57,362 nucleotides of DNA from Macrostomum lignano (taxonomy: Eukaryota). The stretch spans positions 1 to 57,362 of the forward strand of contig NIVC01004162.1 of the NCBI GenBank assembly GCA_002269645.1. Reading direction: 5' to 3'. Position numbers and translations under genes: made by a program. The notes under the pieces are model-generated. The model had not been told where the DNA came from. It worked only from the letters and a program-made list of their open reading frames with translations, and did not search any database. Shown piece by piece: positions 7,801 through 41,073 of this stretch; positions within the stretch are counted from its first letter, which is position 1; each line of letters starts with the position of its first letter.

Positions 7801-10800
7801 GAGAACTAGTGTGCAATAAAAAAATTAAAAAAGTTCTTCCTCATCCAGTGACTGAGCGAATGGGGTGGGTTAGGTGCAATTCTCGTGGCAGTGGCTGTTG
7901 CTGCGGTGTGTAAGGTTTTTAGACTTGATTGGCTTTAGTAATTCAAAAACATACAGTCAAAAAACGCAGTTACCTCCTATATCGGCCAGAAGATTTTTCG
8001 CGGGGTAGGCCTCCTCTTCCGAAATTTCCTGACCATACGACGTCAATCCTTTAACCGTCAGTTGAGCCAGTCGGTCTCGAAGAAATTTTAGCTCGTTTTC
8101 AAAATTAATTCTATCGTGCAAGTTGCTCTCGGTCAGATTGCTTTCCAACATGACCAGAGAGCGCCAGTAAGTGCTGTAGATGCTGCTTATTCCTCTAAGA
8201 CGACTGTACTCTGTTCCTAAGCCAAAATTGTGCGCCAGCTTCTTTAGAATCTCCATCGACTTGGCGCCACTTAGATCCGGCCAAGCGTAGGAGATAAGCC
8301 GCATGTCGTAGTCGGTTTCCTCGCACGGCGACAAGGCTTTCTTAGCCGCCTCGAACTGGTACTGCAGCAGCTTCGATAACTGCTCTCTGTAGCATGATTC
8401 CCGTAGCCTTGACACAGTTCCCGTGTCATTGGTGTCAAAGCAGAAGGTATAGTTCGAGAATAACTCAACTTCAATTGGCAGAAATGATGGCAAGCAGTTA
8501 CATGCCTTAGCGAAATGTTGCACAGTAAATTTGTTTGTGTAGTCTTCTTTGCTTGGGATATTGTAGCGCCAATCCATTGCTTGCAGGGGTCTACAAAGTC
8601 AAATGTAAAAGATTTCATATCGTAGGATTAAACTGTTGGACAGGTTAAAATTTTGAGTACAGTATGCCACGCACCTCAACGCGTTTTGTTTTTCAAGTTG
8701 TGCTCGCAGAACAGCAATTTTTTGCCACCATTCCGAGGCTGCCTTAACGAAGTGTAAACGTATATTTTCCCTGAAATAGAAAGTCACGATAATGCAATTT
8801 AGGATCATACTTATGTCCAAGTAATATTTCCAGGCTTACTCATTAGAACTCGTGGTTTTAGCCTGCTTCCAAGACGGCATTCTGTAAGTTACAGGCTCCG
8901 TGTTCTCAACACAGGGCCTCGATGCAGTGGATAGCTTCTTAATTTTTTTAAAACTCAACTGAATATCCATGCTTTGAGCTGTGGCAACATCGACACCCTT
9001 TGACGGCCATGGGTAGCTGCCTTCTGGGACTATGACTGCCTGCAAAATTCAGATGTTCGTGAAAAACTAATAAAGTGGTAATTAAATAAAAGCTTCTACT
9101 AACAATGAGAAATAAGATTGAACAGGCGGGGTTGAGAACTAGGAACTAAGACATGGGAATTAGGACATGAAAAATTGAGAGAAGAACACAACGCAACGGC
9201 ATGGTACAAACAGTTTCAAAATATTCACTGTTTGTAGGACTTACTTTAAAAGCGATTTTTCTTTCATCATTGCTGACGGACCTGTGCACGATGCGGTTCA
9301 GCTTGTCCAATTCTGGTATTGTTCCACCATTCGAGTCTGTCAAGTCCGTGAAATATTTGATTGACAGCTGACTGTCCGCCAACTGCGAGCTGGACATGTT
9401 CTGGGTGAATCGCTGCTTCATAAAGTGGTGACACATGCCCAGCTGCGGGTGAGACACGCTCAGGAAGTCGTCTTTAGTGCAGCTCTGGCCACCGAAGGAG
9501 CACTCGGCCAGGGTGAAGCTCAGGTCGCTGCTGAACTGCAGGGCCAGCAGGTGGCTGCCGATGCCATCCCGGATCGCAGCAGTCACGGTGGGAACTTTAG
9601 TGTCTGCAAGACATCAATAAGAGCTAGAAAACTGTAGCACTTATTGACTGTGACATTTCTTCTACTTATCTTAAAGCTAAATACATGTACTATATTGTAT
9701 TGTGGCCTAAGCAGAAGGGGAGGGGCGAGGGGGGGGGACGTTCCTATTAAAAAAACAAACTAAAGAACTGATGGGTTCCTTTCATAAGACCGAAATTTCA
9801 CAACACCGAAAACTCCATATGCAAGACCCTTTACAAGTCCGAAAATTCATATGACGGAAAGTTCACATCGTAGAAAACTTAATAAAACAAGGACCATGCA
9901 AATATTTGGCGTTGTCAAATTTGGTCTTGTACGAGCTAGAGGGTCTCGTATATACTCGTAGAGTTTTCGGCGTTGTGAAATCACAGGCCTAAGATGAGAG
10001 GGACAGGCCCAAGGACAGGGGCGGGCGCCAATCGAGAGACAGACATTCAGACAGAAGTGAGACAGATGCAGGCAGAAACTGGCACAATATTTTTTAGGAC
10101 TATTTGACTGGCAAATGCTAAACTCACAGCAGGCGGGAATGTCGCACTTGGTCAATGCCAAATTTACCAAGTTGGATTTTCCGAAGGTGTCAGAAGCGCA
10201 GGAGGGAGCCTCGTCGTCTGATTTCAAATCTGGGTTCCGACTGAAATGTTCGATATGAGAACTTAGGGCTGCAAGTGTTTTGGCACTTAAATAATTACTG
10301 AATTGGCAGCACTATTAAGCGTATAGCTGCAATCAAAGCTTACTAATAAACCCTGTCTGAAAAGCCAAACTCCCGGATAATTTGAGCAGGCCTGCAAAAA
10401 TTGTCAGCACCTTCAAGCCGGTCATAGTCGGGCGTTTCCAAATGAATCCGCATTTTATAGTCATAGTTGGCTGAAATGTGACAGTTTAAAATATAAAGAC
10501 ATTTTGTTTAAATATTAAAAGCGCTGGAGGACAACTGGATTATATAAATAAATAAAATACTTTCACTCAACAACTACACAGTTTTTTTTATATCGTTATT
10601 GTGTTATTGTGTTTTGTTGTTACTGCTACTAGAGAAGAGTTTCTCATTCAGTCACAAATTGTTTTTGTCTGATGTTTCTAAACTTGTACGAGTAGTAGCG
10701 AAACTTGCTTCCCCGTATAATCGTTTGTATATAAAGTATACGTGTAACTTATAAAGTATAGCTACTTATAATCTAAAATTCTAATAAATGATTTTTTCTC

Positions 10801-13800
10801 GTCAATTAGTTTTTTTATTGTCCAAGACAACTATTAGACCATACTGCTAACTTAGCCCAGGTTTTTGTTGTTAAAGCGCTTTAAATATTATCATAAATTT
10901 TCCCGAAAAAACTTTCTTTCCTCGAAAAATCTCGTTAATTTTTTTAATTGAATATAATACTTACGAATAAATACTTCACCGTTCTACTAGTAACCACCAC
11001 CGTATTGGTTTTACACGTAAAACGCGTTTTATTATTTTACGTCTACATAGTACATGCACGTTACCAACTGGATCTATTTTTTGCTTTCTCTGCTTGTTTC
11101 GTTCCACGATCTGGTTCCAGGCCAAGCAGGGCTCTCCCGAGGCCGCCACATTCCTGTAGCCGGTGTAGACGGCCTGCTGTCGCTGCCGAGCTGCTTCGTC
11201 AGCTGTACCAGAAATGCAGTCATAGCCGGAATTCATGCCTATAAAATGATGTTGTAGTACTCCTAAAGTTACTGAAATTTTATTAAGTTTATTAAGGAAT
11301 CGCTGTCTGCATCAGCGGTTAGACGCTACTCATACATGCTACACTGTCAAAACCGGAGATTGCGACGTTTGCCAGCCGATGTTAATAGTCGACGTCGTCA
11401 TACAAGTCATTAAGTAGATTAAGTGCGTTGCTCGTACATTACTAGACTATACACGCTTATGCATTCGCATGTATAAACATGTAGGTAGTCTGGAGCTTAG
11501 ACTCAAGGGCCACTAGAAGTTACCGTTGTAGCAGTTGTGTTACAGCCTGAATACGAGTACAACGGTAACTTCTAATCGTCCTTGCTTAGACTTCTACCCA
11601 CGGTAATTTATTTGGAACTCGTGAATCCTGGCCGAACGCCAACCGTCGAATCGCGTGGCCTTTTATTAAGCTCCGAAAATTCCGTCTGCTCAAATTGTTT
11701 CATAGCGAATGTATGGTCAGCATCTTTACGGGCGTTATAGAAATCTAAATGAACTCAGTAGAAGGCATGAGGGGGCTTTTGGGACAAAATTTTTCACGTC
11801 CTCCATAATCCCATTAAATCCATCCATATTATCCCTGACAGAATCAGAAAAAAAGGGGGGTCGCACTCGCTCCGAAAACGTCCTCCATAATCCACCTAAA
11901 TCCATCCATATTATCCCTGACAGAATCAGAAAAAAGGGGGGTCGCACTCGCTCACAAAACGTCCTCCATAATCCCATTAAATCCATCCATATAATCCCTG
12001 ACAGAATCAGAGCAGGTGTCCACTGATACCTGTTATGTTCACTGACACTGACATCCACCCATAGCATCTTCGAAACAATCAGAAAATAATCTGCATTCTT
12101 CTCCCCATGGGGCCCACATTCAATTTGCAACGTGCTACCACATCCCTAAGACTTTAAATCCCCAAACCATGGGTCCTTACCCTTTGAAAAAAAACTAAAT
12201 TCTCAATAAAAATGTTTCCAGTTGTCTCTCCAGGTTCTTATTATACTCAGCCTCATCCATTGTACAAATCCAAGTACCGATGCAAACTAGAATGCAGCGA
12301 GTACATGAGAAAATATTGGCCCGACGTTGATATCAATGTCCCTAATATTAATCAAGCACTTAAATCTCACTGGTTTGAAAAACACGGAGTAGTCATTAAC
12401 AATTTTGACAGCTATTATAACTTTGCTGAAGTTATAAGGCAGTTGTAGTAGCCAACTACACGGTTGTACCCTGTAGAGTGCAGACGCAAGATCTAAAAAT
12501 ACTGACAAAATCATGTGCAGCATATAGCGGCTCGTATTAGTTACATTTGTAAGCGATAGCTTACTGATAGTAAAGCTATTTGAACATGGCGCGAATTCCT
12601 CACATGGTTGACTAGAAAATGTCGCCATGTGCAAGGCAAGGACTTGGTGCAAGGGCGTATAAATAGCAGTTCCACTCAGCTGGCTAGAGGTGGAGCCGAC
12701 CTCGTGTGGCTATGACTGACTGACGAGGGCAAACAAGCCCGAAACCGGTCTCAGTCTGCCCCGCATGGTTCGATTCCCACTGGTTACATGATTTTCACGA
12801 ACGTTCGTAAAAATCATGTGCAGCATAAAGCGGCTCTCAGTGGTTACATGATTTTTACGAACGTTCGTAAAAATCATGTGCAGCATAAAGCGGCTCTCAG
12901 TGGTTACATGATTTTTACGAACGTTCGTAAAAATCATGTGCATAACAAGAATTCGCACGAATTCAACTGTGCAAAATAGCATTTTTCTGAGAAAGACTAG
13001 TGCGCAGTTGGATTCGCGCCATTTCCTGTCTTAACAGGAATTCGCACGAATTCAACTGTGCAAAAAAAAGCTTTTTTTCTGAGAAAGACTAATGACAGAC
13101 TTGTGTTTTTTATGTGCGAATACTTGCGAAGTTAACCAACTTTTGGCATAATAAAACAATAGACTGAGCACAGACTATCTTTTTGTGTCCGATTTCTTTT
13201 GTGTTTTCAATCCTTTCACTAAATACTGGTTAGAAAAAAAATAATGCTTGGTCAGTCCAAAAAGCGTGAGGTTGCCTACTAATAAGTATTATGACTAGAA
13301 AAATATACTAAAAATTCGAAATAGAACTGAAATAAAATATTTAGTTATTTTAACATCACATTCTCTCAATGATCAACGTCAATACAAACTCTTCACAGTT
13401 GAAATCAACACCCATCCCATCTTCAATCTCAAACTGTAGCACAATCTCGTGAATCTCCTTATTACTCAATACAACTCTTTTCACTGGATTTGGTTTCTCT
13501 ACCACCATCTGTCCTCCAGCTACAGAGTTGGAGATATTGTACAAAATATTCGTTCGCTTTCCCTTAAATACCCAATCAAGACTGAGATTAGTTCTGATTA
13601 GAATATTCAAACCCTTTACAATGTCTGCTATATTGGGTGCTAAGAACAAACCGCGTACACTTTCCCGGGCCATGCTAACGGTCCCCAATGCTTGAGTGGC
13701 GGTCCGCGCCGCGGATTCTGCCTTATAAACTTTCTTCTCGAATCCCAGTTCCCTATACCAAGTGTCATCTTTAAACTCAACCTCCGCATCTTTGTGAACT

Positions 13801-16800
13801 TGCATGACCACTCTCACTACAGTGAGATCATAGGTTAGTTTGACAGGGAACAGTTTCTTCTCTGGCTTACTCGCATCAGGTGTCTCAAAATGGCCTCTCT
13901 TAGTAAAGACATTTTCTAGAAAGTTATTGTAGGTATCCACACTTTGCGTGCTCACCTGGAATACCACAGGGTCTGCTGCTGCACCTTTCCATTTGTAATA
14001 AAACTTATTATTTGCTGCCATCACATTGGGAACGTTTGACCAACCAGTGAAGTCGTTAAGATAGACATGGTAATTAGCGCCTGGATCCAGGCGAATCGCC
14101 TGCTCTAATTTTTCAACAAACATCCCGTTTGAGTCATTAATTCGCCCAGTTATTGTAATAGGAATGCTCTCCTTGGAGTGCGAAATAATATTATTTAGTC
14201 TTTCAGCAATCGCTTCCATTTTTTTTCACATAAAAAATATTTAAACTTTACTGGATGAATTGTTGATCATGTTAAGCTTCACCTTCCTCTCAAATGCATA
14301 GATAATGTACAAGTCCACGGGTGTTGCGACAGTCCTTTCAATGTTAGTCACGATATTCACAGGGCTGTTATCAGTAGGCATTTGTCTGGCAGACACATCA
14401 GCTCCAAACATCGGATATAGAGTTCCATATTGAAGAGCAGTGATAGCAATTCCATTGTTCTCTTTCACAGCCAAGTCGACCAACTCGCTGTAAAATTTGC
14501 TAATCTTGTTCTGACTGAAATCTCCATTTTGTGGCAGTGCAGGGTAAAGATTATCACTGATTTCATGCTGAATGGACCGCACGTCTCCATGCATGTAGCG
14601 TATAATGCTATTTGGGTTTCTCATATTAATAATGATATACCTTGGATTGCTGCATGATCCCTCTTTGATGCAGATGTTTGTTCTAGTTTCGTTTCGCTCA
14701 TCTCGACACATGTAGGCCGTGTATGCAACATCAATGTCCTTCTCTATTGCCTTAAGATAGTCTGCTTTTAGTGCAGTCTTTGGCTCAATGACTTCCAAAT
14801 ACAGCTCGATTCCGGTTAGCTTCACCTCCATCCTTGTGTGGTCCGCCCCAGTCCACAACACTCTACTGCGATCATCTCTAGTCAGTCTAAATGTGTAGCT
14901 AAAGTTACTAGTCAGTCGATTAAATGTATTACAGAATCCACTCATGAATCTCAGTGGTACAAATACATCAACAGACCGATACTGCGGGTTCTTAGCAGCA
15001 TCATCAGCACCTTGCAATGCATAGTTGTATCTCTTCTTCCTATTTTTATAACCACTGTCATTGATATCTCCTTCTTTTTCATCTGCAATAAAACCCGCAC
15101 CACTTCCCAACTGAATAAAATCAGGATTCTCGATCAAACAATGAGCGTCATAGACAATTCCAAAGTTGGCGATTCGCTCCAACTCTGTGCTCCCATTCGA
15201 TACACTAAACTCCTTGAACATGTACGCCCAAAAGTTACTGATCAGAGCCACATCCGCATCATGCTTGTCAACGTTAGCACGAGCCGCATCCGCACCACCT
15301 TTTGTCTTGAATTGAAATGTCATATGGAAGCCGCTCTTAAGACTGTGCACACTAACCAGAGACGAACATCCATTGTATGTAAATGTCAGTGTTTGACCTG
15401 GACCCAAATTAGTTTCATTCTGGTTCTCGTGACTCGGAACTCTAACTTGTGTCGCTTTGATTGTGCTATCATCACTCAAAATAGGCTTGTTAATTTTGTA
15501 GAAAACTGGTGTCAGTGGGTCGTTCATTTTTTAACTAAAAATAAAATAAAATAAGAAATGAAGCGGAAAAGTACACAGCAGATATCTGAATTGGAGAAGC
15601 TAGCACAAGCAGAGAAACGAGTTACCGGGCTAATAAATAAGGAGCAACAATCCTACAATGAGTTTGTCCAAGCAGCCACAGAGTTTCATAAGCCCGGGTA
15701 TGGAGAAGCTAAGAAAAATATTGATCAGGTCAAAGAAACTATCGACGACATACAGGAAACCCAAGTGCAAAAGGTTTTGGGCAAAATTCCAGAAGCACCA
15801 CAGATACAGCCGCAACCACAACAACCACAACCACATCAATCACAACTAAAAGTGACAGATAACATTTTTGGACCAGTAGAGCGTGTCGAACATGATGGGA
15901 AATATGTATTTGGAATAAGTATGTGGAGAAGAAACATTTATAATGAACCAGTGGAATATTATATCGACATAAATAAGAAACATATTTCTGTTGTCAAAGG
16001 CTCGGAAACTAAGAGCATTCCTTTCACAGAAACCTTACTGACTTTTATGACCAAGAACCAAGAGAGAATCTCGGACAAACAGCTAAAGAACTATAGAGAT
16101 CTAGTGACTTTTGCTCTTGCTAGAGATATAGCAATACTAAAGGCCCCAGAAGTCCTGAGACTTATGTATGATAACGGTGTCAACCTGACTAGATTCAAAA
16201 AGTACAATCACTTTAAACAATGGTTCGATTTGCCAGATCAGGCGGAAGTCATAAAATATCTAGAACAACAACAACAACAGCAACAACAACCACAACCACA
16301 GCAGCAGCAACATTTCACAGAAGTACTCAGGCAACTGGAAAATGCAGATCCGACTCAAGTAGCTGAATATAAGAAACAAAACCCAACAGATTGGCAACAC
16401 TTAGAACAACACTCTCCAGATCGAATGAACAGAATCAAGCAAAGAGTTTTCACACCTCAACAAAGACAGGCACCACATGACAGTTCCATCTCTGAAAGTG
16501 AGCAGTCTTTTGCATCACCTCCCCAGCAGCCACAAGCCCAACCAACTCCACAACCTCAAGACCAACCGCCCTCAACTGGAAAAGGCATGCCTGAATTCTA
16601 CAAGCGGTTAGCTGTTCTTCTAGGAGCGGCAAAGACCGGAATGAAAGACGAGAATAGAAAAGAATTTGTCAACATCCTGGACAAAATGCTTGAGAGAAAA
16701 TATATCGATAAAAGAGCAAGAGAACTTTTGCTTTCACGGTTTAACAAAAAATAAATTTCTATTTAAAATGATGCCAATTATTTTCGAAAAAGACATTGAC

Positions 16801-19800: not shown

Positions 19801-22800
19801 CGGCCGTCGATTCCACGTCACCGACATCTTGGTTTGGGCCCTAGACAACTTTCAGCCAAGTGGCAGTCGCCGAGAAAATCTCACGAGCCGAGAAACTTTT
19901 ATTCATGTCTTTTCTAGAATATCTTGACTCGTAAGATTTTCTCCAACAGATTTTCTTGCCGGAAAAGAATTTCTTTAATTTTTCTCATTTTTCTCATTTT
20001 CTCAATTTTTCTCATTTTTCTCATTTTTCTCAAGATTTTCTCACGTTTTATTCATACGGCCCGCTGTCTCAACGTTGCCAGTCATCACAGCCCCAATCGC
20101 AATCCCACTCGGCTCTGTGGGTGCTGCATGTGGACTTATTTCAGCAATTACTGGAGCATTAGCGCGAAACAGGCGAAAAAAACTAAAACAGCTACAGGAG
20201 AAGCAAGTAAAAGAGAAAGGGGTGCACACTTCAATCATAGGGTACATTTCAAGGGCAATCGAGGATAAGTTCATTTCAGAGGATGAGTTCAAAACCATTC
20301 AGGATCTTTATGAACAATCAATTCGAATGAACTTGAACATGGTCGGTACTGATGACATGAGTCAGCTGAGAAATGAACTCGAGAAAGTTCTTCAACATTA
20401 TGCGGAAAGAAGGACAACGAGAAATTCGGTAAGAAGGACGACGAGAAATGCACAATGAACCCCTATGAAACACAGGTACGAATAATTTCCTTGTAGGTCT
20501 TTCGTGTTTTGGTCATTGCAAACAAAACAGTCATGCACAGCTCACCGCAAATATCACTGCTAAGACCTTGGAGAATAAAGTCTGAGCGATAAATTTTTTT
20601 ATTCTTTTTTCCCTTCATATAATTTCTTAGCTCTTCTGGTACTGCCGTCCCATAGCTATCGAAGTAATAACACTTGTGCTTGCGATCGGGATCAATCACC
20701 CAGCAAACCCAATGAGATCCTGGCTTATCGGTGGTGTCAAAGTTCATGATGCCGCATTCCTTTCTTAGAGGAAAATCAGGCAGAGTGTCCCTCATAAATA
20801 TTTCTCTAAAGTTTGGGATTTCCAGTTCGTTAGCCAAATCTTCAAGAAAGTTATTTGTCGTCATTTTTTTGAGTTTTATTAAACTTTCTCTTAAACCTAA
20901 ACCTAGTCTCCACCTCCTAAACCCAACCTCCTAAGCCTAATCTCCAATGCCCGAACGGTAGACTGTTAATATTGTCATCAAAAATGAATCTTTGTTATCT
21001 GCACCTGACAGTCCAATCTTCTTTTGCTGAATTGTGTGAATAATATGGTTTTTAGATTGTAGCTTTGAGAACTCATGTGATGTCTTTTTGTTGCAATTCA
21101 AGGCGTCTCTGTATTCAGCTTCATTAATTTCCTTCCTAACTACACGTTTCGGAATTCCCTTTGATTTTTTATTGGGTCTGACGACTCACATTTTATAAAA
21201 TAGGACTTTGCTCTCAACCCAATGAATTCAGTGATTATGTCACCAGCAATCTCGTCCTTCATTTTCCCAATCACTTTCTTGTTAGTGGCGTCAAACACTT
21301 GATCGCCATTCTGTGTCCTGAAAGATCATCAACTCAGACAAGTCAAACAAATCTTTTTGCTGCAGCATGTCCTGATAAATGTCTTCTGTTTGAATGTCCA
21401 TAATAAAACTGTCTGTGTCAGTGTACAAGAGTTTCATTTTATCCTTGTACTGCTGCTTCATGCCATAGAAGAACTGGTACATCAGACGTTTTGATTCGTC
21501 GAGACAGTGACACCTGTATAGATCGGCTTGCGCAGCGTCACCTTGGTTTTGTAAAATATGATCACACCTAAGTAGCTATTAAAGATATGGAGTTCTTTGA
21601 ATGTTGGCTTTGACATATTTGCCTGAATAACAGCAGGCTCTGATGAGGTAACAAGTTTCAGGTTTGTTCTTTTCCTCTCATTCTCAAGAGTCTTGCCATA
21701 GACAGAGTTGTTGGCCAACTTAAAGAGGTTCTTGTCAAAGTCGTTGGTTGCTTTGGTCCTAAACTGGGTGTTCTTATCAATGTAGGGTTTCATCCACGCT
21801 TCCTCTGTAAATGTAAGAGCCCTGTGAACTTTGGTGACCCTGCAACCAAGTGAGATAAAATACTGAAGCAGTTTGTAATGGATTTTGTAACGTGTCTTGT
21901 TGTTTAGATTCTGTGTTAGTTTCTCTGTATGTTCTTTTTCTGTTCCTGACAGGTGCCAAGTTCCATTATTATCATTGGGAGTTTCGATTATTTTCGGGCA
22001 CTTGATGTTTTCTGGGAAGGGTGGAAAGTCAGAAATAGTCGTGAAGCTCTGGTGGAATGTAAACATCAACCTCATAAATGGCAGCCAATGAAAAGTCCCA
22101 CTTTAGTTCTGATGAGGGTAGCCATCGAAAATCTCTAACTGGAAGATCTTGACTCATCGCCCACCCGTAGAGATTATTAGCGTCCAAGTAAGTAATGTAG
22201 TTTGAGGGCTGCTCCTTATTGTAAGATTCAATGTAGGGATTGTTTGCTTTTGCATACTATGTGCAAATTGAGATTCCCCCTCGCTTTGACGATTCGACAA
22301 AATTGTACATGTCAATGTCTGTAAGAAGTTCAATGTACCAATCTGGATCTTGATCCCATTTCATTTTAAGCAAAGATTCCCAGCTAGTGGCAGGCAGAGA
22401 CACATAATGTGCTGGATCGAGGCCATATGCTGTGTACCAGGTGTATCTGAAGGTTTCAAACACATCGGCCAGCAGAAACACATCTGTGAAGAGGTAAAGC
22501 AGGTGATACTGGAAGAAGTTTTGACAATTAAAGTAATTATAGACATGCTTCGCGTGCTCATAGTCTTTGTCAGAGATTCCAGAGTCTGTTAGCTTTGAAA
22601 AGAACTTCTCCTGTGGTGGTAAACCTTCTTCAAATACGTGATACCCAGTAATATTTTCATAGGGGTAGAAGCCTTTCTTTCTTAAAAGTTTAAATGATTC
22701 ATCACTGTTGTTAATTTTACTTGCAAACATCTTTGTATATGTACATTGTTCATCTTTTAGATTCTTGCTTAGTTCGTCTAGACTGGCAGCTAGAAATTGA

Positions 22801-25800
22801 TATGAATCCTTCAGTCTTATTTTACCTGTACCCGAATTATCCTGTTTAATATCAACACACTTAAACTTCTCCTTGTTCTCTGCGATGCAGTCAAGGTGTA
22901 TGTCTGGAATCATGCCGATTTTTTCAACTATTAAATGCATGTCATAGTTCTTTGCGTTGTGACAAAATATCGTTAGATCATGAATGTTCGATTTTAGCTT
23001 TAGATTACAGGTGTTATGCGCTGCACCTCTAAATTTCCCAGTAAAGTGGCAGTGGTCCCTAACGGTGGGGTTTTTAATATTAGTGCAAGTTAAATGTTTC
23101 CTGCAGATGTGGCAATGAGTTGCTGATAGGAAATTGCTTTCATCCTCCTCAGACATACTTATTGGAATAGGTTGAAGGGTGCTAATCACTCTTTGCAACT
23201 CTAACATTCTGGCAATAAACTGCTCCACACACTGCTCTCCAAAGAAATAATTAGACTCAACAAGTCCTTTTGTAGTAATACGAGCTAAAGGCATATGCTA
23301 CTGAATTGGGGACATGTTTTTGAGTTTGAGTTTGTTTTTGTGTTTCCGGCACGATTGAGCATTCAAAATCAGCATATACAACAAATGGGAGCTTCTCCAT
23401 CTTGTGATAGTTCTTAAACCGGAGATACTTCTCTTCAGCTGAAGGAAGAGAGCAGTTTGTCGGGTGATCCTCGCATGATAATTCATGCTCTGTTAGCTTT
23501 TCAAAGCGTTCAGGTCCACTGTAATGCTTAAGGCACAAGCGGCAGATGGCAACAGCCTCGTGATGATTATTCAACTGCTTGTGAATGAGTCTTGAAAGAT
23601 CTTTAACCCAAACATAGTGAGCCTCCTCTAGTAAATTACCAATCACTAGAAGATCCACTTCAGTCCGCCTTTTCCCCTCAGGATCTAAAACGTCTTTGCT
23701 ACATCTGACCGGTTGAACTTTTTTCAGTTTTCTCACTCCACTCAAAGACTGTGATTCTAATTTTGTTATTAAACACTTCTTCTAGCTTTGGGATCTGAGA
23801 GATCGCCAAGCCTCCTTTGTCAAACCTGATTCCCTTCTTTTCGCATTCGATGAGATAGTAGTTGAAATAATTTTGATAATTTGAGGTTCTTTCGGGGTGG
23901 TGAGGGACACTATCATAAAGAAGTGCAGAAAGAACTGCCCATAGAGCACAGCAATTGTCTTTATTTTTAACATTTATGCAAGCTTTTTTGCCGGCTAGCT
24001 TGTATGGGAGCTCTATATAAGAGGAGGCTTTAAGTGGGTCATATTTCATGACCATGACAGTCGCTCTTTGAATCCCTCCCACGACCCATCCGGAACCTCT
24101 GGATGTAAACGCTTCAATTTTCTTATTGACATCTTGAAGGAAAGGATCCAGTGTGTCTGTTGGGGTGAATGGCTTTGCCTTTGTTGTCATGTAATACTCG
24201 AGATGCTCAGTGGGTTTTGCAGGCATATAAAACGCAATCTTGAATGATATCTGTAGTTTAAAAGTCTTGCGTGTTTTGAGTGTGTGATCAACAACTGATT
24301 GGATGCTGTCTTTATAGTCGTAGATGTTTGCGGTGGTACCGTTGGTGCCGTTAATTGGGATTGTGTACTCTATGTAATGTTCTGTAAACTTCCTCTGTGC
24401 AAAATTAATCTCTTCAGTGGCAAGCTCCGACTCTTTTAAATGGATTAATTGCTCTAATTTCTCTTGTTCCTGCTTATTTTGTGGGTACTTTGCTTTTTCA
24501 CCAGTGAGAGTTTCGTATTTGTTAACTAAGTTGCGACTCTCTCTTGGTGTTCTTTGCAGGATTTTGATAGGCACATACTGGTTGGATTCTAATTGTTGAT
24601 GATTTCCAACTGTTTTTCATAGCTTCCCAGGTGACCGGGGTCGGTGTTAAACTTTTGTTTACATGCTTCTCTTAGTAAATTACTTTTGTCTTGAAATGAG
24701 ACGCCTTTTGAAAAATGTTTGTTGACTAAATCTTTTGCTGGATTAGCTTTTGGCATTTTTTTCTCTAAAATAAAACAAATTTTTGAGGGTGACCACCCTG
24801 ATAGAAAAGTTGAACTGTTTCTACATCCTATAAGTAGCGCTAGGTTTATGAAGCTGGATAAAGTGGGGTTTAAAACCTCATCACATGCGCATTATTGTAA
24901 ACCCAGCATTGTGCAGTGTCATGATTGCTTTGACAATGTCAGACTTGCTTACAGAATTTTCATTCTCACAATCATCACGATCGGGGCAGGCCTCTCCTGC
25001 CTTAATTGTTATACCTTTGTCTCTTGCAATCTTTTGCAATTCCAGCTGGTGGGCTCTATCATTCCCAGCTTTAACAGCAGTTGCTACACCTCCAGCTACA
25101 CCACCTGCGGCACTTACAGCGCCTGCAATGATCGGAATAAGAGCTGCTAATGGTAGGATTCCTCCTGACTTTTCATCTGTGATGCTGTGTCTTTGCTCAT
25201 TACACTGAAGTATTTGCTGCGTGGGATCGATTTTTACTTTGGCACCTTTAATTGATATAATACCTGGTTTCTTTGATTCAATGATTTTATTGAGTTTATT
25301 GATGGTTCTGGTTTCAATCTTTGTCATTTTTTATTTTAATATTTTAATTAATTTCTGTGTCAGCTGGTATCACTAGGAGTTCAGCTCTAGTGAATGACCG
25401 CGTGGGGGATTTAGGGTTAAAGGCTTGAGATAAAAAGTAATAGTCACCGGAGTCGGAGGTAAAATGTCTGTCTATTTTATGCACATCAAGGCTGAAGTAT
25501 GGATCTGTAGCTCTTCTTTTGGTGTCCTTCTCTAGCTCTCCAGGTAGATATAAAAAGCGTAGAAACTCAGAGTTTGTCAGTATGTATGGTGATTCAACTC
25601 CTGGAAGCTTAGGGTAGTTCGAGGTGTGTTTTGTGTTGTGTGTGTTGTGTGGGGTGGTCGTGTTGTTGTCTGTTCTATGAGATGCCTTAAGTTCGACAGT
25701 GTCTTGTTTAATTGCATGGGATGGTTTCAATCCAGTCATGCGTGTGACTTCATTGTTCAGTTGCTCTATAACAGTGGGGAGTCTATCTGTCCACTTGGTA

Positions 25801-28800
25801 TAGTACTGCCCCGCACTCAGTTTGAGTTCTTGCGCTGTCTGCTTAGTGAATAGTCTCTTGGCTAGAGTTAGATTGAATCTTTCCACAAAAGCCTGGTCTC
25901 TGTGGAGCTCAGTTCTGCCATAGCGAATCTCTGTGTTTTTCTTTTCCATAAGGGATTTCACTACACCCATGAATTCCTTACCCGGGTCGGTCATAAAGAT
26001 TTGGGGGTATGTGAGCGGAGAGTTTTTATAAATATCTTGGAGGGCGGCTGCAACTGCTTCTGACTTCTTCGTCTTAAGCGGTCTCGCTTCCTTATATCTG
26101 GAGGCAACGTCTGTAATTGTAAGAGCATACTTGTAGCCTGAGTCGTTGGGGAGAAACAAAAGATCTGCTTGGTGCGCTTCATTAGGTTTATAAATACTGA
26201 AATGGGGCCTTTCAAATTTTACTGGTGGGAAATAGACTTGAAAGACAGCCTGCTTAGAGAGCCATTTTTCTACTGTAGCTTTTGGCTCCTTACTCAGCTC
26301 CATGAGTTTACTAACGGCATTTTTTGCCTACAAAGAATCCTTTGTCGCTGTAGTAGAGTTTTTTAAGTTTCTGATCTGTCATTTATTTAAAAAGAAAATT
26401 TTAAATAAAATAATGCAACGCTCTGGTGGTAAAATAGATTCACATGGACTGATAGAAAAGCTTCCTCATCCAAACAAAGGCTGGACACTTCCCGGCTATA
26501 AATATTGCGGGCCTTTGAATCCTCTTGAAATACAGTTAGATAAAAACAATAATCCAAATCCTGGGCATGAGCCTGTGAATGAGCTAGACTCTGTCTGCAT
26601 GTGGCACGATGTTAAATATAGAGATTTTCCTGAGGAGAAGAATCGCTGGGACAAAGAAATGCTTAAGAGACTAGACAATATAGGGGCTTCAAGCGGATTT
26701 CGTGAGTCGATCGCTCGGAAGCTAGTTAAAGCTGTTATTTTTAGTAAGACAAAACTGGGGTTGGGGGTGTACGCCGAGGGCGGGTGTTTGGGGAGAGAGG
26801 GCGAGTGCACGGGGAGAGAGGGCGAACGCACGGGAGCAGAGTTTATTTTGTGCGCTCCTAACAATGAATTGGGAAGACTGCTGAAAGAGCTGGGGGTAGA
26901 AAGGGGCGCTTGAATCGGGAAGGGCATGAGCAAGTGTGGATTTGAGTAAGTACAGTTTTTTATTCCCTAAAGAGTTGCGCACAAGATAGATTCTCATTCT
27001 CCAGAGAGCTAAGAGCAGAAAATAAAAAAGTCAACCGCTTCGCTCCCATTAGCATGCATGGACTGTGTATGTTGAGATTCCCTCCTTGATTGATATTGAT
27101 TATTGGCCAAATTGCGAGGCCAGTTGGCCCGCCGAGTTGGCCTCGGCCCGCCGATTTGGCCTCGGAATGTGGCCCGCCTAGTTGGTCTATACGGTATGAA
27201 TATCTAAAAATAGCCTACGAGTATGAGCGTATAAATTCAAGGAAGAACTGTGCACGTCTCGCCACACTTGGCACATGCCTTCTCTTTCGACTCTCAAGGA
27301 ACGTGTTATTGCATTGAAACGGAAACAAAATAGTAAACTAGGACCCCTCACAGCCAGCCACAGAAAATCTGACTTCAGAAGGATTAATATAGAAGTATTT
27401 CTACAAGAAGAGGAGCCGCAATATAAGGAAAACGAACTATTTTTGCAACGTCTTCGGGAGTATCGATCCTCGCGAAATAAACTTCACCATCTAGAAGAAA
27501 CCGTTCGTACACAAACTAGATTCAATCAAGAAAGACGTGCGGAAGAAGAGGAAGCGGATAATATCCGCTTCCAAGAGGCCGATCCACCACTGCCTAACCA
27601 TCCGCCTGTGGAATCGCCGGCGTTAACAAATTTGCCACCGCCACCGACGACATGGCTTCAACCGCCAACCCAACTGGCCGCGTCGCAGCCTGGTCTATCA
27701 CAACCACCGATCCAGCCGAAGGCTGAGCCAATGGTTACGGATTGGTCAAATTCTGGAGGGCTGTGCCCCTATTGTCAACACGAACCACAATATCCTGTTT
27801 TTACTACATGTTGCAGGGGCGTCTTCTGCAACCAGTGTTTGACAACCGCACTTGCTCAGGGTGAGCAAACCTGTCCTCTCTGCAGGAGCCCCAGAGAACA
27901 AGTGTAACTGTAACTTTTTTACTCGAGCATACTACTGAACTATGTTGATTAAACTGGAGGTGAAAGGTTTTTTCCTAGAAGTCGAGATAATTATTTCTTT
28001 AAACTTTTTACTCGAGCATACTACTGAACTATGTTGATTAAACTGGAGGTGAAAGGTTTTTTCCTAGAAGTCGAGATAATTATTTCTTTAAACTTTTTAC
28101 TCGAGCATACTACTGAACGGTACATAAATACACTCGTGTGTCATCGATGGCGATCTGTTATTTGAAAAGTGACAGATCATGTTCGAAGTTTTCGGAGCAA
28201 GTAGGACACCTGTTATGCTCTGATTCTGTCAGGGATAATATGGATGGATTTAATAGGATTATGGAGGATGTTTTGTGAGCGAGTGCGACCCCCCTTTTTT
28301 CTGATTCTGTCAGGGATAATATGGATGGATTTAGGTGGATTATGGAGGACGTTTTCGGAGCGAGTGCGACCCCCCTTTTTTTCTGATTCTGTCAGGGATA
28401 ATATGGATGGATTTAATGGGATTATGGAGGACGTGAAAAATTTTGTCCCAAAAGCCCCCTCATGCCTTCTACTGAACTCTATCAATGACCACTTTCGACG
28501 AAAATTAGACGAAAAACTTAGACGAAACGGATCGCCTCCTGAAGAGTAATCTTGAAAGAAATTTAGCGCGGACCTCTTACCTAATGCCTGTGTTAAATAG
28601 TTCTATTTCTAACATCTGTACACTTATTCACGGTTAAAGCCTCTTGACTCAATGCTTTTGACCAGTTTGCAAATTTGAACCGAGAACAGTTTGAAACTGG
28701 CCCCATCAGCAAATCAAAAGTTCAGAAGGCGTGTGCGGTGTCCTTCTACAACAGCAGCGTTCAAAATTGAAGCCTTAGAAACCTACGGCAGAGTGGGACG

Positions 28801-36094: not shown

Positions 36095-36663
36095 CCTTGG
36101 TGCCGGCGCCCCTTGGTGCTGGCGCCCCTTGGTGCTGGCGCCCCTTGGTGCTGGCGCCCCTTGGTGCTGGCGCCCCTTGGTGCTGGCGCCCCTTGGTGCT
36201 GGCGCCCCTTGGTGCTGGCGCCCCTTGGTGCTGGCGCCCCTTGGTGCTGGCGCCCCTTGGTGCTGGCGCCCCTTGGTGCTGGCGCCCCTTGGTGCTGGCG
36301 CCCCTTGGTGCTGGCGCCCCTTGGTGCTGGCGCCCCTTGGTGCTGGCGCCCCTTGGTGCTGGCGCCCCTTGGTGCTGGCGCCCCTTGGTGCTGGCGCCCC
36401 TTGGTGCTGGCGCCCCTTGGTGCTGGCGCCCCTTGGTGCTGGCGCCCCTTGGTGCTGGCGCCCCTTGGTGCTGGCGCCCCTTGGTGCTGGCGCCCCTTGG
36501 TGCTGGCGCCCCTTGGTGCTGGCGCCCCTTGGTGCTGGCGCCCCTTGGTGCTGGCGCCCCTTGGTGCTGGCGCCCCTTGGTGCTGGCGCCCCTTGGTGCT
36601 GGCGCCCCTTGGTGCTGGCGCCCCTTGGTGCTGGCGCCCCTTGGTGCTGGCGCCCCTTGGTGG
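36095..36663. repeat. 16-bp minisatellite (CCTTGGTGCTGGCGCC), about 35 copies
   Basis: Essentially invariant tandem unit. Confidence 0.98.

Positions 36664-38867: not shown

Positions 38868-41073
<2,206 letters not shown>

What the first reader, a model, noticed from the sequence alone, without database searches (positions are those of the whole stretch)
10128..30174. DEG/ENaC channel with kringle-WSC-kringle modules in its extracellular finger region
Seen: between FPDVYIC and the CSFGGQSC palm segment the gene splices in frame through a kringle-like exon, a WSC exon (absent from the ORF track) and a three-exon kringle, each module bounded by phase-1 introns. Known: 1-1 phase is the exon-shuffling signature of kringle modules; kringle plus WSC is the Kremen ectodomain pairing; the finger is the variable gating region of ENaC/ASIC. 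Inference: a channel gated by glycans, proteins or matrix tethers. I do not recognise this architecture in characterised DEG/ENaCs.
Basis: partly seen in the sequence, partly recalled or inferred. Interest (0 to 1): 0.8.

Follow-up and report, generated by a model that had tools for sequence, protein, structure and literature searches.

The report
Sodium channel with built-in kringle and WSC modules
A flatworm (Macrostomum lignano) DEG/ENaC-type sodium channel gene really does carry binding-type protein modules spliced into the gating "finger" of its outer domain: a kringle that itself contains a WSC domain, followed by a second kringle, an architecture not described for any studied channel of this family; 83% of the flagged span, however, is a virus-like Maverick transposon sitting in one intron.

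Summary
On the minus strand, 12 GT-AG exons (31232-4841) give an uninterrupted 1033-aa DEG/ENaC protein (Pfam ASC 144 bits). It is colinear with RNA-seq-derived Macrostomum lignano gene models.

About 370 residues are inserted between the finger helices, encoded by six exons; the block and each module are flanked by phase-1 introns.

- 28909-28787 supplies the C-terminal third of the first kringle.
- 8770-8675 is a core exon.

With the first of these, the layout becomes kringle 1 (N part), WSC, kringle 1 (C part), kringle 2. The WSC domain is therefore nested inside kringle 1.

- **Kringle:** hhalign gives 97.9% and 97.6% probability against real kringles; shuffled and other controls stay at or below 0.8%.
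- **WSC:** three of four paralog lineages scanned in the first Pfam pass match (two clear the cut-off), later-found paralogs P0011/P0014 also clear it, the profile finds Kremen1, and an AlphaFold model matches yeast Wsc1. The window's own WSC is degenerate.

The insert was found only in M. lignano, in at least six paralog lineages, among 1.84 billion representative proteins.

Positions 11757-28473 are a 16.7-kb Maverick/Polinton in intron 4, absent from the homeologous locus. This copy also has Phe in place of the conserved selectivity-filter Ser. The proposed function, binding or tethering coupled to gating, is inference only.

The parts
30671..31232 (-). Exon 1 (aa 1-188). Contains the start codon, the cytoplasmic N-terminus with the TTAHGLG 'HG' motif, TM1 (LIWIGFLLG...), FPDVYIC and the first finger helices. 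Ends in phase 1.
   Evidence: Pfam ASC profile positions 1-103, E 3.6e-15. Sequence and junction.
29854..30150 (-). Exon 2 (aa 188-287), phase 1-1. Encodes the N-terminal two thirds of kringle 1: C1 (LLDC), GEEYAGN, C2-x2-W (KPCIRW) and C3 (SRCRAP). An alternative upstream acceptor lies at 30174.
   Evidence: The 30150 acceptor is the one used in the RNA-seq-derived model P0002. hhalign of K1N alone against kringle columns 1-30 gives 91.6% probability, E 8e-7.
28997..29272 (-). Exon 3 (aa 287-379), phase 1-1. Encodes the WSC domain, which is degenerate in this copy.
   Evidence: No Pfam hit on the window copy. The homologous exon scores PF01822 41-43 bits in P0006 and P0014 and 39 bits in P0011. 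The insert profile matches the Kremen1 WSC. An AlphaFold model of the P0003 segment matches yeast Wsc1 with TM 0.72.
28787..28909 (-). Exon 4 (aa 379-420), phase 1-1. Encodes the C-terminal third of kringle 1: GPFCFF (C4) and AAFCNVPLC (C5, C6).
   Evidence: Present in P0001 and P0002 and annotated as an exon there. hhalign of K1C alone against kringle columns 72-96 gives 96% probability, E 4e-9. It also matches the C-terminal end of the Kremen1 kringle.
11757..28473 (.). A 16,717-bp Maverick/Polinton element inside intron 4 (the intron spans 11239-28786). It has a 6-bp target-site duplication GAGTTC, AG...CT termini and ~260-bp terminal inverted repeats. It is not part of the channel's coding sequence.
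   Evidence: Empty site in the homeologous locus L001. Protein matches: rve integrase, protein-primed PolB, adenovirus-type protease, A32-like ATPase, double-jelly-roll capsid, PLA2, RING, and an adenovirus protein X-like protein.
11065..11238 (-). Exon 5 (aa 420-478), phase 1-1. First exon of kringle 2: C1 (YDC), YTGYRNVAASGEPC (C2) and LAW.
   Evidence: Pfam Kringle 15-18 bits, below threshold. hhalign of the K2 alignment gives 97.6% probability, E 3.7e-12.
10344..10470 (-). Exon 6 (aa 478-520), phase 1 in and phase 2 out. Middle exon of kringle 2, with ...TPDYDRLEGADNFCR (C3) and an extended C3-C4 loop.
   Evidence: The same exon boundary is annotated in P0002 and P0003.
10128..10240 (-). 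Exon 7 (aa 520-558), phase 2 in and phase 1 out. Last exon of kringle 2: PSC (C4) and TKCDIPAC (C5, C6).
9245..9603 (-). Exon 8 (aa 558-677). The channel core resumes here: a finger helix (TAAIRDGIGSHLLALQF) followed by AECSFGGQSC.
   Evidence: The Pfam ASC match resumes at profile position 148. Aligns to FaNaC 7yvb from residue 190.
8840..9039 (-). Exon 9 (aa 678-744), extracellular core.
   Evidence: Colinear with P0003 and P0011.
8675..8770 (-). Exon 10 (aa 744-776), phase 2-2.
   Evidence: Homologous to P0003 aa 739-769. GT-AG junctions, in frame.
7974..8590 (-). Exon 11 (aa 776-982). Thumb and palm regions, up to ...AKNLLADIGG.
   Evidence: Pfam ASC profile positions 306-437..
4841..4998 (-). 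Exon 12 (aa 982-1033). TM2 (ALGLWSGIFVLTICELLEF), the short C-terminus and the stop codon. The filter reads G-I-F, with F991 where every relative has Ser.

Best explanation
**Shown**
- This is an intact copy of a Macrostomum lignano DEG/ENaC-family channel gene from a FaNaC-related lineage.
- An ancestral phase-1 intron in the finger-coding region has acquired a block of disulfide-rich extracellular modules through phase 1-1 exons.
- The encoded ectodomain carries about 370 extra residues at the outer finger: a kringle whose C3-C4 loop contains a complete WSC domain, followed by a second kringle with an enlarged C3-C4 loop.
- The architecture is old within this lineage. At least six paralog lineages, 27-43% identical, share the same intron positions. 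The split kringle is conserved as strongly as the channel core.

**Inferred**
- The finger helices are the part of DEG/ENaC channels that binds ligand or is released by proteases, and that drives thumb and pore movement.
- Kringle and WSC are protein- and carbohydrate-binding modules.
- The most likely role is therefore a built-in receptor or anchor. It would bind an extracellular macromolecule (glycan, matrix or a secreted protein) and pass binding or tension directly to the finger to bias gating.

**About this particular copy**
- It tolerates a 16.7-kb Maverick in intron 4.
- It carries a Ser-to-Phe change in the GxS selectivity filter, so its own conductance may be altered.

**My confidence by step**
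- Gene model and nested architecture: about 0.9.
- Modules exposed on the finger: about 0.75.
- Binding or tether-coupled gating: about 0.35.
For: **Gene model**
- 12 GT-AG exons give an open 1033-aa frame, colinear end to end with P0003 and P0011.
- The GenBank models of the homeolog and a paralog have the same exon structure.
- Those models come from a genome-guided RNA-seq transcriptome (PMC5730564).

**Channel identity**
- Pfam ASC 144 bits.
- FaNaC 7yvb at E 2e-14, plus ASIC, ENaC and PPK chains.

**WSC**
- Pfam PF01822 matches 3 of 4 paralog inserts, best E 7e-11. P0011 scores 39 bits and P0014 43 bits against a cut-off of 27.8.
- The insert profile finds Kremen1 in the PDB at E 3.4e-8.
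- An AlphaFold model of the P0003 K1N-WSC-K1C segment reached pLDDT 81.6 and pTM 0.74.
- Foldseek on that model gives Kremen1 at E 3.6e-5 and yeast Wsc1 at TM 0.72, rmsd 2.6 A.

**Kringles**
- An exhaustive HMMER scan with the insert profile finds bona fide multi-kringle proteins at E 1e-15 to 1e-21. Four of these were checked and score 150-243 bits on Pfam Kringle.
- hhalign of kringle 1 with the WSC excised covers kringle columns 1-96 of 96, at 97.9% probability and E 3.7e-13. Kringle 2 gives 97.6%.
- Each half of kringle 1 matches its own half of the kringle profile. WSC, shuffled and reversed controls give 0.8% or less.

**Constraint**
- All kringle cysteines are invariant.
- Window versus P0003 identity: K1N 54.5%, K1C 51%, core 50-52%.

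**Position and relevance of the finger**
- The insert lies between ASC profile positions 103 and 148.
- Finger helices alpha1-alpha3 form the FaNaC ligand pocket and the gating lever. The same paper notes ENaC protease sites and proposed matrix-tether sites there (PMC11026163).
- The ENaC GRIP domain is an insertion between finger alpha1 and alpha2 (PMC6197857).
- The WSC domain of Wsc1 is described as a mechanosensor domain (7pz2 title; PMC9024836 abstract).
Against: **No functional data**
- There are no expression, localisation or physiology data for this gene.

**Weak domain signal in this copy**
- The window's own WSC gives no Pfam hit and has an odd number of cysteines (11).
- Pfam Kringle is below threshold in every copy.

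**Binding site**
- By inspection, the canonical kringle lysine-binding loop (NPDxD...PWC) is replaced by the WSC in kringle 1 and by an unrelated long loop in kringle 2. Classical kringle-type binding is therefore unlikely.

**Structure**
- Packing of the two kringle-1 halves could not be checked, because no coordinates were available to me.
- The first AlphaFold run, on the 726-aa homeolog protein P0002 (which lacks the C-terminal part of the channel), failed at pLDDT 30.
- The finger position is inferred from sequence alignment only.

**Signs of decay or optional use**
- F991 replaces the conserved filter Ser.
- The homeolog on L001 is disabled by a stop codon, a 1-nt deletion and a ~780-bp insertion. 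This gene pair may be decaying after genome duplication.
- All module exons are phase-symmetric as a block and could be skipped. One older automated model (P0001) does skip two of them.
Confidence: 0.55

Rival explanations
1. The insert is an internal regulatory or structural domain, analogous to the ENaC GRIP domain. It would pack against finger and thumb to set open probability, assembly or trafficking (possibly protease-sensitive), with no external macromolecular ligand or tether.
For: - ENaC's lineage-specific GRIP domain lies in the same finger region and acts as an autoinhibitory wedge (PMC6197857).
- The split kringle is conserved as strongly as the core, as expected for a piece that packs against the channel.
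- Classical kringle binding residues are absent, by inspection.
Against: - Kringle and WSC are independently folding binding modules elsewhere, for example in Kremen1 and Wsc1.
- 370 residues is far larger than a wedge needs to be.
- No conserved furin-type site is visible across paralogs in the alignment.
- WSC and kringle 2 evolve faster than the core, at 23-35% identity. That fits surface or ligand-facing modules better than a packed wedge.
Confidence: 0.25
2. This particular locus is a subfunctional or decaying duplicate. The family architecture is real, but the window copy no longer makes a normal conducting channel.
For: - F991 replaces the Ser of the GxS filter, which is kept in all paralogs, the homeolog and the Ptychodera relatives.
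- The WSC is degenerate, with 11 cysteines and no Pfam hit.
- A 16.7-kb Maverick enlarges intron 4 from ~0.8 kb to 17.5 kb.
- The sister copy on L001 is clearly disabled.
- M. lignano carries extensive recent duplication (PMC5730564).
Against: - The 1033-codon frame is fully open and all 22 splice sites are canonical.
- The degenerate WSC is shared with the homeolog, so it predates their split.
- Window versus L001 dN/dS is below 1 (0.28-0.62). The counts are small and include the decaying partner.
- One base change (TCT to TTT) could also be an assembly or strain variant.
Confidence: 0.25
3. The modules are optional cassette exons. Because the whole block is flanked by phase-1 introns, splicing exon 1 directly to exon 8 stays in frame, and each of exons 2-5 and the exon 5-7 block is also skippable. 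The gene would then produce both plain and decorated channels.
For: - Exon 1 to exon 8 splicing is in frame, since both junctions are phase 1.
- The older automated model P0001 joins exon 5 directly to exon 8.
Against: - The RNA-seq-derived models for four paralogs (P0002, P0003, P0006, P0011) all include every module.
- P0001 is a gene prediction containing other obvious errors.
- Skipping only exon 3 or only exon 4 would leave a broken kringle.
Confidence: 0.15
4. The architecture is an annotation artefact. The kringle and WSC exons would belong to a separate secreted-protein gene nested in a large intron of the channel.
For: - The modules lie in what would otherwise be a single phase-1 intron.
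- Exon 1 to exon 8 splicing would give a normal-length channel.
Against: - No start codon or signal peptide precedes the modules.
- Every module exon begins and ends in phase 1, compatible only with read-through from exon 1.
- In P0003 the introns are only ~80-180 bp, leaving no room for a separate promoter.
- The same order recurs in at least six paralog lineages.
- The GenBank models are transcript-derived.
Confidence: 0.03

Closest known systems
FMRFamide-gated Na+ channels (FaNaC) within the DEG/ENaC superfamily. Closest solved structure: 7yvb, listed as 'FMRFamide-gated Na+ channel'; PMC11026163 describes an Aplysia californica FaNaC structure.
   Same: - Two-TM topology, HG motif, FPxVxxC, the palm cysteine pattern and the TM2 sequence GLWxGxS...E.
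- Best solved-structure match by sequence, E 2e-14.
- M. lignano has genes in a branch next to FaNaCs. Three tested genes from that branch did not respond to the FMRFa-type peptides tried (PMC9234716).
- The finger alpha1-alpha3 region is the ligand and gating site.
   Different: - FaNaC has a simple helical finger of a few dozen residues. Here ~370 residues of kringle and WSC modules are inserted in it.
- No evidence for peptide gating.
- The filter Ser is Phe in this copy.
[quoted passage not shown]
   Same: It is also a lineage-specific, disulfide-stabilised insertion in the finger, between alpha1 and alpha2, and it controls gating (PMC6197857).
   Different: - GRIP is a small beta-sheet unique to ENaC that carries inhibitory tracts removed by proteases.
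- The flatworm insert consists of recognisable shuffled modules (kringle, WSC) with their own folds.
- No conserved cleavage sites were seen.
Kremen1/2 ectodomain (kringle-WSC-CUB)
   Same: - It is the only well-known protein pairing a kringle with a WSC domain.
- It is the top PDB match of the insert both by sequence profile (E 3.4e-8) and by fold (E 3.6e-5).
   Different: - In Kremen the domains follow one another, a CUB domain comes next, and the protein is a single-pass Wnt/Dkk co-receptor (PMC5014086 abstract).
- Here the WSC is nested inside the kringle's C3-C4 loop.
- There is no CUB domain.
- The unit sits inside an ion-channel ectodomain.
Yeast Wsc1 cell-wall integrity sensor (WSC domain, PDB 7pz2)
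   Same: - Same WSC fold: TM 0.72, rmsd 2.6 A over 95 columns for the paralog model.
- In Wsc1 this domain belongs to a surface sensor reported to sense mechanical stress at the cell wall (PMC9024836 abstract).
   Different: - Wsc1 is a single-pass signalling sensor in fungi, not a channel.
- Only 26-27% identity.
- The window's own WSC has lost one conserved cysteine and gained two others.
Predicted mosaic DEG/ENaCs of the hemichordate Ptychodera flava (P0007-P0009)
   Same: - Extra extracellular modules begin ~35 residues after FPSVTVC and lie between the two halves of the ASC profile, the same finger site.
- This suggests the finger is a recurrent docking point for shuffled modules.
   Different: - The modules differ: LDL-receptor class A, F5/8 type C (discoidin), PAN and CUB.
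- The acquisition is independent.
- These are automated predictions, and I did not check their transcripts.
C. elegans MEC-4/MEC-10 touch channel with extracellular partners (from general knowledge, not tested here)
   Same: It is a DEG/ENaC channel proposed to be gated through links to extracellular matrix proteins. PMC11026163 names the finger corner as the proposed tether site.
   Different: In nematodes the matrix-binding domains are on separate proteins. Here candidate binding modules are part of the channel polypeptide.

Membership tests
DEG/ENaC (Pfam ASC, PF00858) | Profile match above the curated threshold, covering both ends of the domain | tested here: met
   144 bits against a cut-off of 23.6. 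The match comes in two stretches, profile 1-103 and 148-455.
DEG/ENaC (Pfam ASC, PF00858) | Two transmembrane helices, an N-terminal HG motif and a post-TM1 FPxVTxC-type motif | tested here: met
   TTAHGLG at aa 46, TM1 at aa ~64-85, FPDVYIC at aa 106, TM2 at aa ~985-1005. This rests on reading the sequence; no topology predictor was run.
DEG/ENaC (Pfam ASC, PF00858) | G/S-x-S selectivity filter in TM2 | tested here: not met
   The window reads G-I-F (F991). The homeolog, P0003, P0011 and the Ptychodera relatives read G-x-S. This fails for this copy only, not for the family of paralogs.
DEG/ENaC (Pfam ASC, PF00858) | Trimeric, amiloride-sensitive Na+-selective conductance | not testable with these tools
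   Needs expression and electrophysiology.
Kringle (PF00051) | Pfam match at or above the gathering score | tested here: not met
   Best score on the window protein is 17.9 bits against 34.3. All 4 paralog inserts match, but below threshold, with best E 2.9e-4.
Kringle (PF00051) | Six cysteines in the C1...Y-x-G...C2-x2-W...C3-R...C4...C5-x4-C6 pattern | tested here: met
   Both kringles have all six. They are invariant in the four aligned paralogs and in register with 45 real kringles.
Kringle (PF00051) | Profile-profile similarity to bona fide kringles over the whole domain, with controls | tested here: met
   - Kringle 1 with the WSC excised: 97.9% probability, E 3.7e-13, columns 1-96 of 96.
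- Kringle 2: 97.6% probability.
- Each half of kringle 1 matches its own half; controls give 0.8% or less.
- The insert profile finds multi-kringle proteins at E 1e-15 to 1e-21 among 1.84 billion proteins.
Kringle (PF00051) | Kringle fold with 1-6, 2-4 and 3-5 disulfides, formed by the two separated halves | tested here: inconclusive
   AlphaFold is confident on both halves (pLDDT 85-96 and ~83; pTM 0.74). However, no coordinates were available to measure Cys-Cys distances, and Foldseek cannot align across the 130-residue interruption.
Kringle (PF00051) | Lysine-binding pocket (acidic pair in the NPDxD loop, aromatic PWC/W/Y residues) | tested here: not met
   - By inspection, the loop is replaced by the WSC in kringle 1 and by a long unrelated loop in kringle 2.
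- PWC is PFC/PYC in kringle 1 and PSC/PVC/PGC in kringle 2.
- This feature is not universal among kringles.
WSC (PF01822) | Pfam match at or above the gathering score | tested here: not met
   - The window copy gives no hit.
- The homologous exon of paralogs passes: P0011 at 39.1, P0014 at 43.0 and P0006 at 41.1 bits against 27.8. P0003 scores 26.4, just below.
- Membership for the window copy is by homology to these (alignment).
WSC (PF01822) | WSC fold | tested here: met
   - Tested on paralog P0003: the AlphaFold model matches Wsc1 7pz2 at TM 0.72 and rmsd 2.6 A, and also matches Kremen1 and a glyoxal oxidase WSC.
Kremen family | Sequential kringle-WSC-CUB ectodomain on a single-pass membrane protein | tested here: not met
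   There is no CUB domain, the WSC is nested rather than sequential, and the host is a two-TM channel. This is a resemblance of parts only.
Maverick/Polinton (the intronic element) | Terminal inverted repeats, 6-bp target-site duplication, protein-primed PolB, retroviral-type integrase, double-jelly-roll capsid, packaging ATPase and adenovirus-type protease | tested here: met
   - TIRs of ~260 bp at 98.8% identity, TSD GAGTTC, and an empty site in L001.
- rve 36.6 bits and PolB PF03175 40.3 bits, both above cut-off.
- Below cut-off: Peptidase_C5 (E 4.6e-4), A32 (E 1.5e-3) and DJR (24.6 bits against 27).
- PolB and the ATPase are each split over several ORFs.

The most novel reading that the evidence does not exclude
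M. lignano has evolved a family of DEG/ENaC channels with a self-contained extracellular receptor or anchor, a WSC domain nested in a kringle plus a second kringle, grafted onto the gating finger. The channel would then be opened or modulated directly by binding to a glycan or matrix component, or by tension through it.

Together with the independently decorated hemichordate channels (LDLa, discoidin, PAN, CUB at the same site), this would show that the DEG/ENaC finger is a general socket into which exon shuffling plugs new sensory modalities. It would also provide a natural, genetically tractable test of the tether model of DEG/ENaC gating.
Probability: 0.3. Interest if true: 0.8.

Novelty: new variant of a known kind. 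Interest (0 to 1): 0.6.

Why it matters
**What is unusual**
- Characterised DEG/ENaC channels sense protons, peptides, proteases, bile acids or force through a compact ectodomain.
- To my knowledge, and in the literature I could search, none carries recognisable shuffled adhesion or binding modules.

**What it would offer if functional**
- It would be a channel whose candidate ligand- or matrix-binding part lies on the same polypeptide as the pore, attached at the helices that drive gating.
- That makes the long-debated tether and extracellular-ligand ideas for this family directly testable: delete, swap or load the module.
- The organism already has transgenesis (PMC5730564); RNAi (from general knowledge).

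**Broader interest**
- It is a clear example of three-level domain nesting produced by phase 1-1 exon shuffling: WSC inside a kringle inside a channel ectodomain.
- A similar decoration at the same site in hemichordate predictions hints at a general evolutionary route to new gating modalities.

**Caveat**
- Everything about function is inferred.
- This particular copy may have an altered pore.

Tried and rejected
1. **Pfam on single exon translations and on my first spliced model.** ASC was clear, Kringle reached only 15-18 bits and WSC gave nothing. This was not decisive for the modules, so I moved to paralog profiles.
2. **Word-indexed protein search with the insert alone.** It found nothing, not even the 96%-identical homeolog. 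This reflects the limits of the word filter and is not evidence of absence. The full-length query then found the M. lignano relatives.
4. **AlphaFold on P0002 with a six-sequence alignment.** It failed at pLDDT 30 and was discarded.
5. **Profile of kringle 1 minus WSC against PDB sequences.** Only the C-terminal half matched, weakly (E 0.07). hhalign against 45 real kringles superseded this.
6. **Alignment A6, with kringle halves as separate rows.** MAFFT mis-threaded them into the WSC columns, so I did not use it. A5 was used instead, although its NYCRNP motif is misplaced.
7. **First gene models.**
   - The 968-aa and 1001-aa models each lacked an exon.
   - They were corrected by comparison with P0002, and then with P0003 and P0011.
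It adds an unpaired Cys and is not the one used in the RNA-seq-derived homeolog model.
8. **Nested separate gene.** Considered and rejected; see the rival explanations.
9. **Conserved furin-type site in the insert** (the GRIP analogy). By inspection, none is shared by the paralogs.
10. **Literature.** Five searches for kringle, WSC or other extra domains in DEG/ENaC channels found nothing relevant.
11. **Last word-indexed protein search.** Left unused, because the exhaustive HMMER scan had already answered the distribution question.

Full report
**Source and overall layout**

The window comes from the flatworm Macrostomum lignano. The best protein matches are M. lignano entries: BOX15_Mlig013355g1 (P0002, 91% identity, truncated) and A0A1I8IQF7 (P0001). 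The gene lies on the minus strand.

Reading the sequence and assembling exons in Python gives 12 exons with canonical GT-AG junctions:
- 31232-30671
- 30150-29854
- 29272-28997
- 28909-28787
- 11238-11065
- 10470-10344
- 10240-10128
- 9603-9245
- 9039-8840
- 8770-8675
- 8590-7974
- 4998-4841

Together they give an open frame of 1033 codons. The product aligns end to end, without large gaps, with two complete M. lignano paralogs, P0003 and P0011.

**Check of the observation**

- Exon 1 ends in phase 1 after the FPDVYIC segment.
- A kringle-like exon, a WSC exon and a three-exon kringle follow.
- The palm exon with CSFGGQSC starts in phase 1.
- The WSC exon has no ATG/GTG/TTG start, so it is missing from the ORF list.

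Three corrections are needed.

1. A 123-nt phase 1-1 exon at 28909-28787 was missed. It encodes ...SNGPFCFFKDDFGRLEAAFCNVPLC. It is present in P0001 and P0002 and annotated there as an exon.
2. A 96-nt core exon at 8770-8675 was also missed, first by me as well. It is homologous to P0003 residues 739-769.
3. The acceptor used in the RNA-seq-derived homeolog model is 30150, not 30174.

The GenBank models for P0002, P0003, P0006 and P0011 derive from a genome-guided RNA-seq transcriptome (PMC5730564). The junctions linking both channel halves through the modules therefore have transcript support in the homeolog and the paralogs. They have none yet for this exact copy.

**What most of the flagged span really is**

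Comparison with the homeologous locus L001 (GenBank contig NIVC01000649.1) shows that window positions 11757-28473 are an insertion absent there. Its features are:
- Length 16,717 bp.
- A 6-bp target-site duplication, GAGTTC.
- AG...CT termini.
- Terminal inverted repeats of ~260 bp at 98.8% identity.

It encodes:
- an rve integrase;
- a protein-primed family B polymerase;
- an adenovirus-type protease;
- an A32-like ATPase;
- a double-jelly-roll capsid protein;
- a parvovirus-type PLA2 domain protein;
- a RING protein;
- an adenovirus protein X-like protein.

It is a Maverick/Polinton sitting in intron 4, between the kringle-1 C-terminal exon and the first kringle-2 exon. The equivalent intron is ~0.8 kb in L001 and ~90 bp in the paralog locus L002.

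**Channel identity**

- Pfam ASC scores 144 bits in two stretches, profile positions 1-103 and 148-455.
- With the insert removed, the closest solved structures are FaNaC (7yvb, E 2e-14), followed by ASIC, ENaC and PPK chains.
- This fits a report that M. lignano has genes in a branch beside FaNaCs. Three tested genes from that branch did not respond to the FMRFamide-type peptides tried (PMC9234716).
- The HG motif, FPDVYIC and TM2 (GLWSG-I-F-VLTICELLEF) are recognisable.

**Identity of the modules**

Pfam thresholds alone are not met on the window protein: Kringle scores 17.9 bits against 34.3, and WSC gives no hit. Profiles built from four paralogous inserts (27-41% identical, all kringle cysteines invariant) settle the question.

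*WSC*
- Pfam PF01822 matches three of the four inserts, best E 7e-11.
- It scores 39-43 bits in P0011, P0014 and P0006.
- The insert profile finds Kremen1 as the best PDB sequence (E 3.4e-8), mostly through its WSC.
- An AlphaFold model of the P0003 segment reached pLDDT 81.6 and pTM 0.74.
- That model matches Kremen1 (E 3.6e-5) and the yeast Wsc1 sensor domain (TM 0.72, rmsd 2.6 A).

*Kringle*
- An exhaustive HMMER scan of 1.84 billion representative proteins with the insert profile gave 1558 hits.
- Those hits include multi-kringle proteins at E 1e-15 to 1e-21.
- Four of these were checked and score 150-243 bits on Pfam Kringle.
- I extracted 45 kringles from eleven of these proteins and ran hhalign against them.
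- Kringle 2 aligns at 97.6% probability, E 3.7e-12.

**The WSC is nested in kringle 1**

- With the WSC exon excised, exon 2 plus exon 4 align to the kringle profile over columns 1-96 of 96. Probability is 97.9% and E is 3.7e-13. C1, Y-x-G, C2-x2-W, C3-R, G-P-x-C4, C5 and C6 are all in register.
- Exon 2 alone matches columns 1-30 at 91.6% probability. Exon 4 alone matches columns 72-96 at 96%.
- Controls stay low: the WSC alignment gives 0.2%, and five column shuffles and the reversed alignment give 0.8% or less.
- The layout is therefore kringle 1 (N part), WSC, kringle 1 (C part), kringle 2. The WSC occupies the C3-C4 loop of kringle 1.
- I could not confirm from coordinates that the two halves pack into one kringle. 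The AlphaFold confidence on both halves and the pTM are consistent with it.
- Each of these exons is phase 1-1. From established knowledge of module shuffling (Patthy's class 1-1 modules), this is the expected signature of exon insertion into phase-1 introns.

**Position in the channel**

- The insert interrupts the ASC profile between positions 103 and 148.
- It lies about 75 residues after FPDVYIC and just ahead of the helix TAAIRDGIGSHLLALQF and the CSFGGQSC strand. That segment aligns to FaNaC from residue 190.
- By alignment, this places it among the finger helices.
- In FaNaC, alpha1-alpha3 of the finger form the peptide pocket, and their movement pulls the thumb and opens the pore.
- The same paper notes ENaC protease and ion sites and proposed matrix-tether sites at this corner (PMC11026163).
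- The ENaC GRIP domain is an insertion between finger alpha1 and alpha2 (PMC6197857).
- This placement is an inference from sequence. No model of the whole subunit succeeded.

**Distribution and constraint**

- Every protein in the top 150 hits that matches the whole insert or also has an ASC core is from M. lignano: P0002, P0004, P0005, P0006, P0011, P0014, P0015, P0036 and P0120.
- At least six paralog lineages share the architecture.
- Intron positions are shared by the three mapped members: the window, P0002 and P0003.
- Window versus P0003 identity by region:

| Region | Identity to P0003 |
|---|---|
| Channel core | 50-52% |
| Kringle 1, N part | 54.5% |
| Kringle 1, C part | 51% |
| WSC | 29% |
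| Kringle 2 | 35% |

- The split kringle is thus as constrained as the channel itself, while WSC and kringle 2 evolve faster.
- Predicted DEG/ENaCs of the hemichordate Ptychodera flava carry LDLa, discoidin, PAN or CUB modules starting ~35 residues after FPSVTVC, the same site. That points to independent decoration of the finger in another phylum. Those models were not checked against transcripts.

**State of this copy**

- The frame is intact.
- The filter reads G-I-F, where the homeolog, all paralogs and the Ptychodera relatives read G-x-S.
- The WSC has 11 cysteines. One conserved cysteine is lost and two are new, a state shared with the homeolog.
- The homeolog on L001 is disabled by three lesions:
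  - a TCA to TAA stop codon;
  - a 1-nt deletion;
  - a ~780-bp insertion with an 8-bp duplication in exon 11.
- dN/dS between the two copies is 0.28-0.62, based on very few changes.
- The family is clearly maintained. Whether this copy conducts normally is open.

**Mechanism**

*Shown:* a DEG/ENaC subunit with a conserved K(WSC)K block encoded in frame within the finger region.

*Inferred:*
- The block is exposed at the outer corner of the trimer and acts as a binding or anchoring device whose occupancy or tension is passed to the finger helices.
- Classical lysine binding by the kringles is unlikely, because that loop is where the WSC sits in kringle 1 and is replaced in kringle 2.
- A GRIP-like internal regulatory role is the main rival.

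No paper in the searchable library describes kringle, WSC or other shuffled modules in DEG/ENaC channels. The proteins exist in UniProt only as automatically named "WSC domain-containing protein" or "Amiloride-sensitive sodium channel".

**Verdict**

This is a real and unusual architecture, a new variant of a known channel family. The functional reading is reasonable and untested.

Noticed in passing
window 11757-28473: A 16.7-kb Maverick/Polinton in intron 4 of the channel gene. It has a GAGTTC target-site duplication and ~260-bp TIRs at 98.8% identity, and the site is empty in the homeolog, so it looks like a recent insertion. Besides the core genes it encodes a parvovirus-type PLA2 domain protein (26302-26913 +, 52 bits), a RING-finger protein (27275-27907 +) and an adenovirus protein X/mu-like core protein (24881-25327 -, 30 bits). 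PolB (about 21140-24574 -) and the ATPase (17201-18140 +) are each split over several ORFs. I did not determine whether by frameshifts or by introns.
   Followed up: partly
window 4841-4998 (codon 991): The selectivity-filter Ser of the G-x-S motif is Phe in this copy (TTT versus TCT). All paralogs, the homeolog and the Ptychodera relatives keep Ser. This could alter or abolish conduction, or it could be a strain or assembly variant.
   Followed up: partly
L001 (NIVC01000649.1), locus coordinates 15484-17283: The homeologous copy of the channel gene is disabled in its 3' half by three lesions: a 1-nt deletion in a T/A run of exon 9, a TCA-to-TAA stop in exon 11, and a ~780-bp insertion flanked by an 8-bp duplication (TATGGTCA) near the end of exon 11. 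The first could be a long-read assembly error; the other two look real.
   Followed up: partly
P0007, P0008, P0009 (Ptychodera flava predicted proteins): Hemichordate DEG/ENaC predictions carry 4x LDLa, 3x F5/8 type C, PAN or CUB domains between the two halves of the ASC domain, starting ~35 residues after FPSVTVC. This is the same finger site as the flatworm insert and may be an independent case of module insertion.
   Followed up: partly
window 776-982 aa region (exon 11, 7974-8590): Two cysteines conserved in P0003 and P0011 (in ...RENCVNTY... and ...ECKSPC / LCLDMC) are both replaced in the window protein (...KEDYTNKF... and ...KKALSPC). This looks like the coordinated loss of one disulfide.
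   Followed up: no
window 35292-38185, 40257-40463 and 43669-45092: Dense tandem-repeat arrays upstream of the gene: 45 bp x 9.8, 16 bp x 35.5, 23/69 bp x 30, 14 bp x 15 and 18 bp x 79. Copy numbers differ from the homeologous locus.
   Followed up: no
window 11796-12011 and 28219-28434; also 12781-12942 and 27916-28118: The Maverick's terminal inverted repeats contain internal 81-bp tandem repeats (2.6 copies each). Further subterminal tandem repeats of 60 bp and 89 bp lie just inside each end.
   Followed up: no
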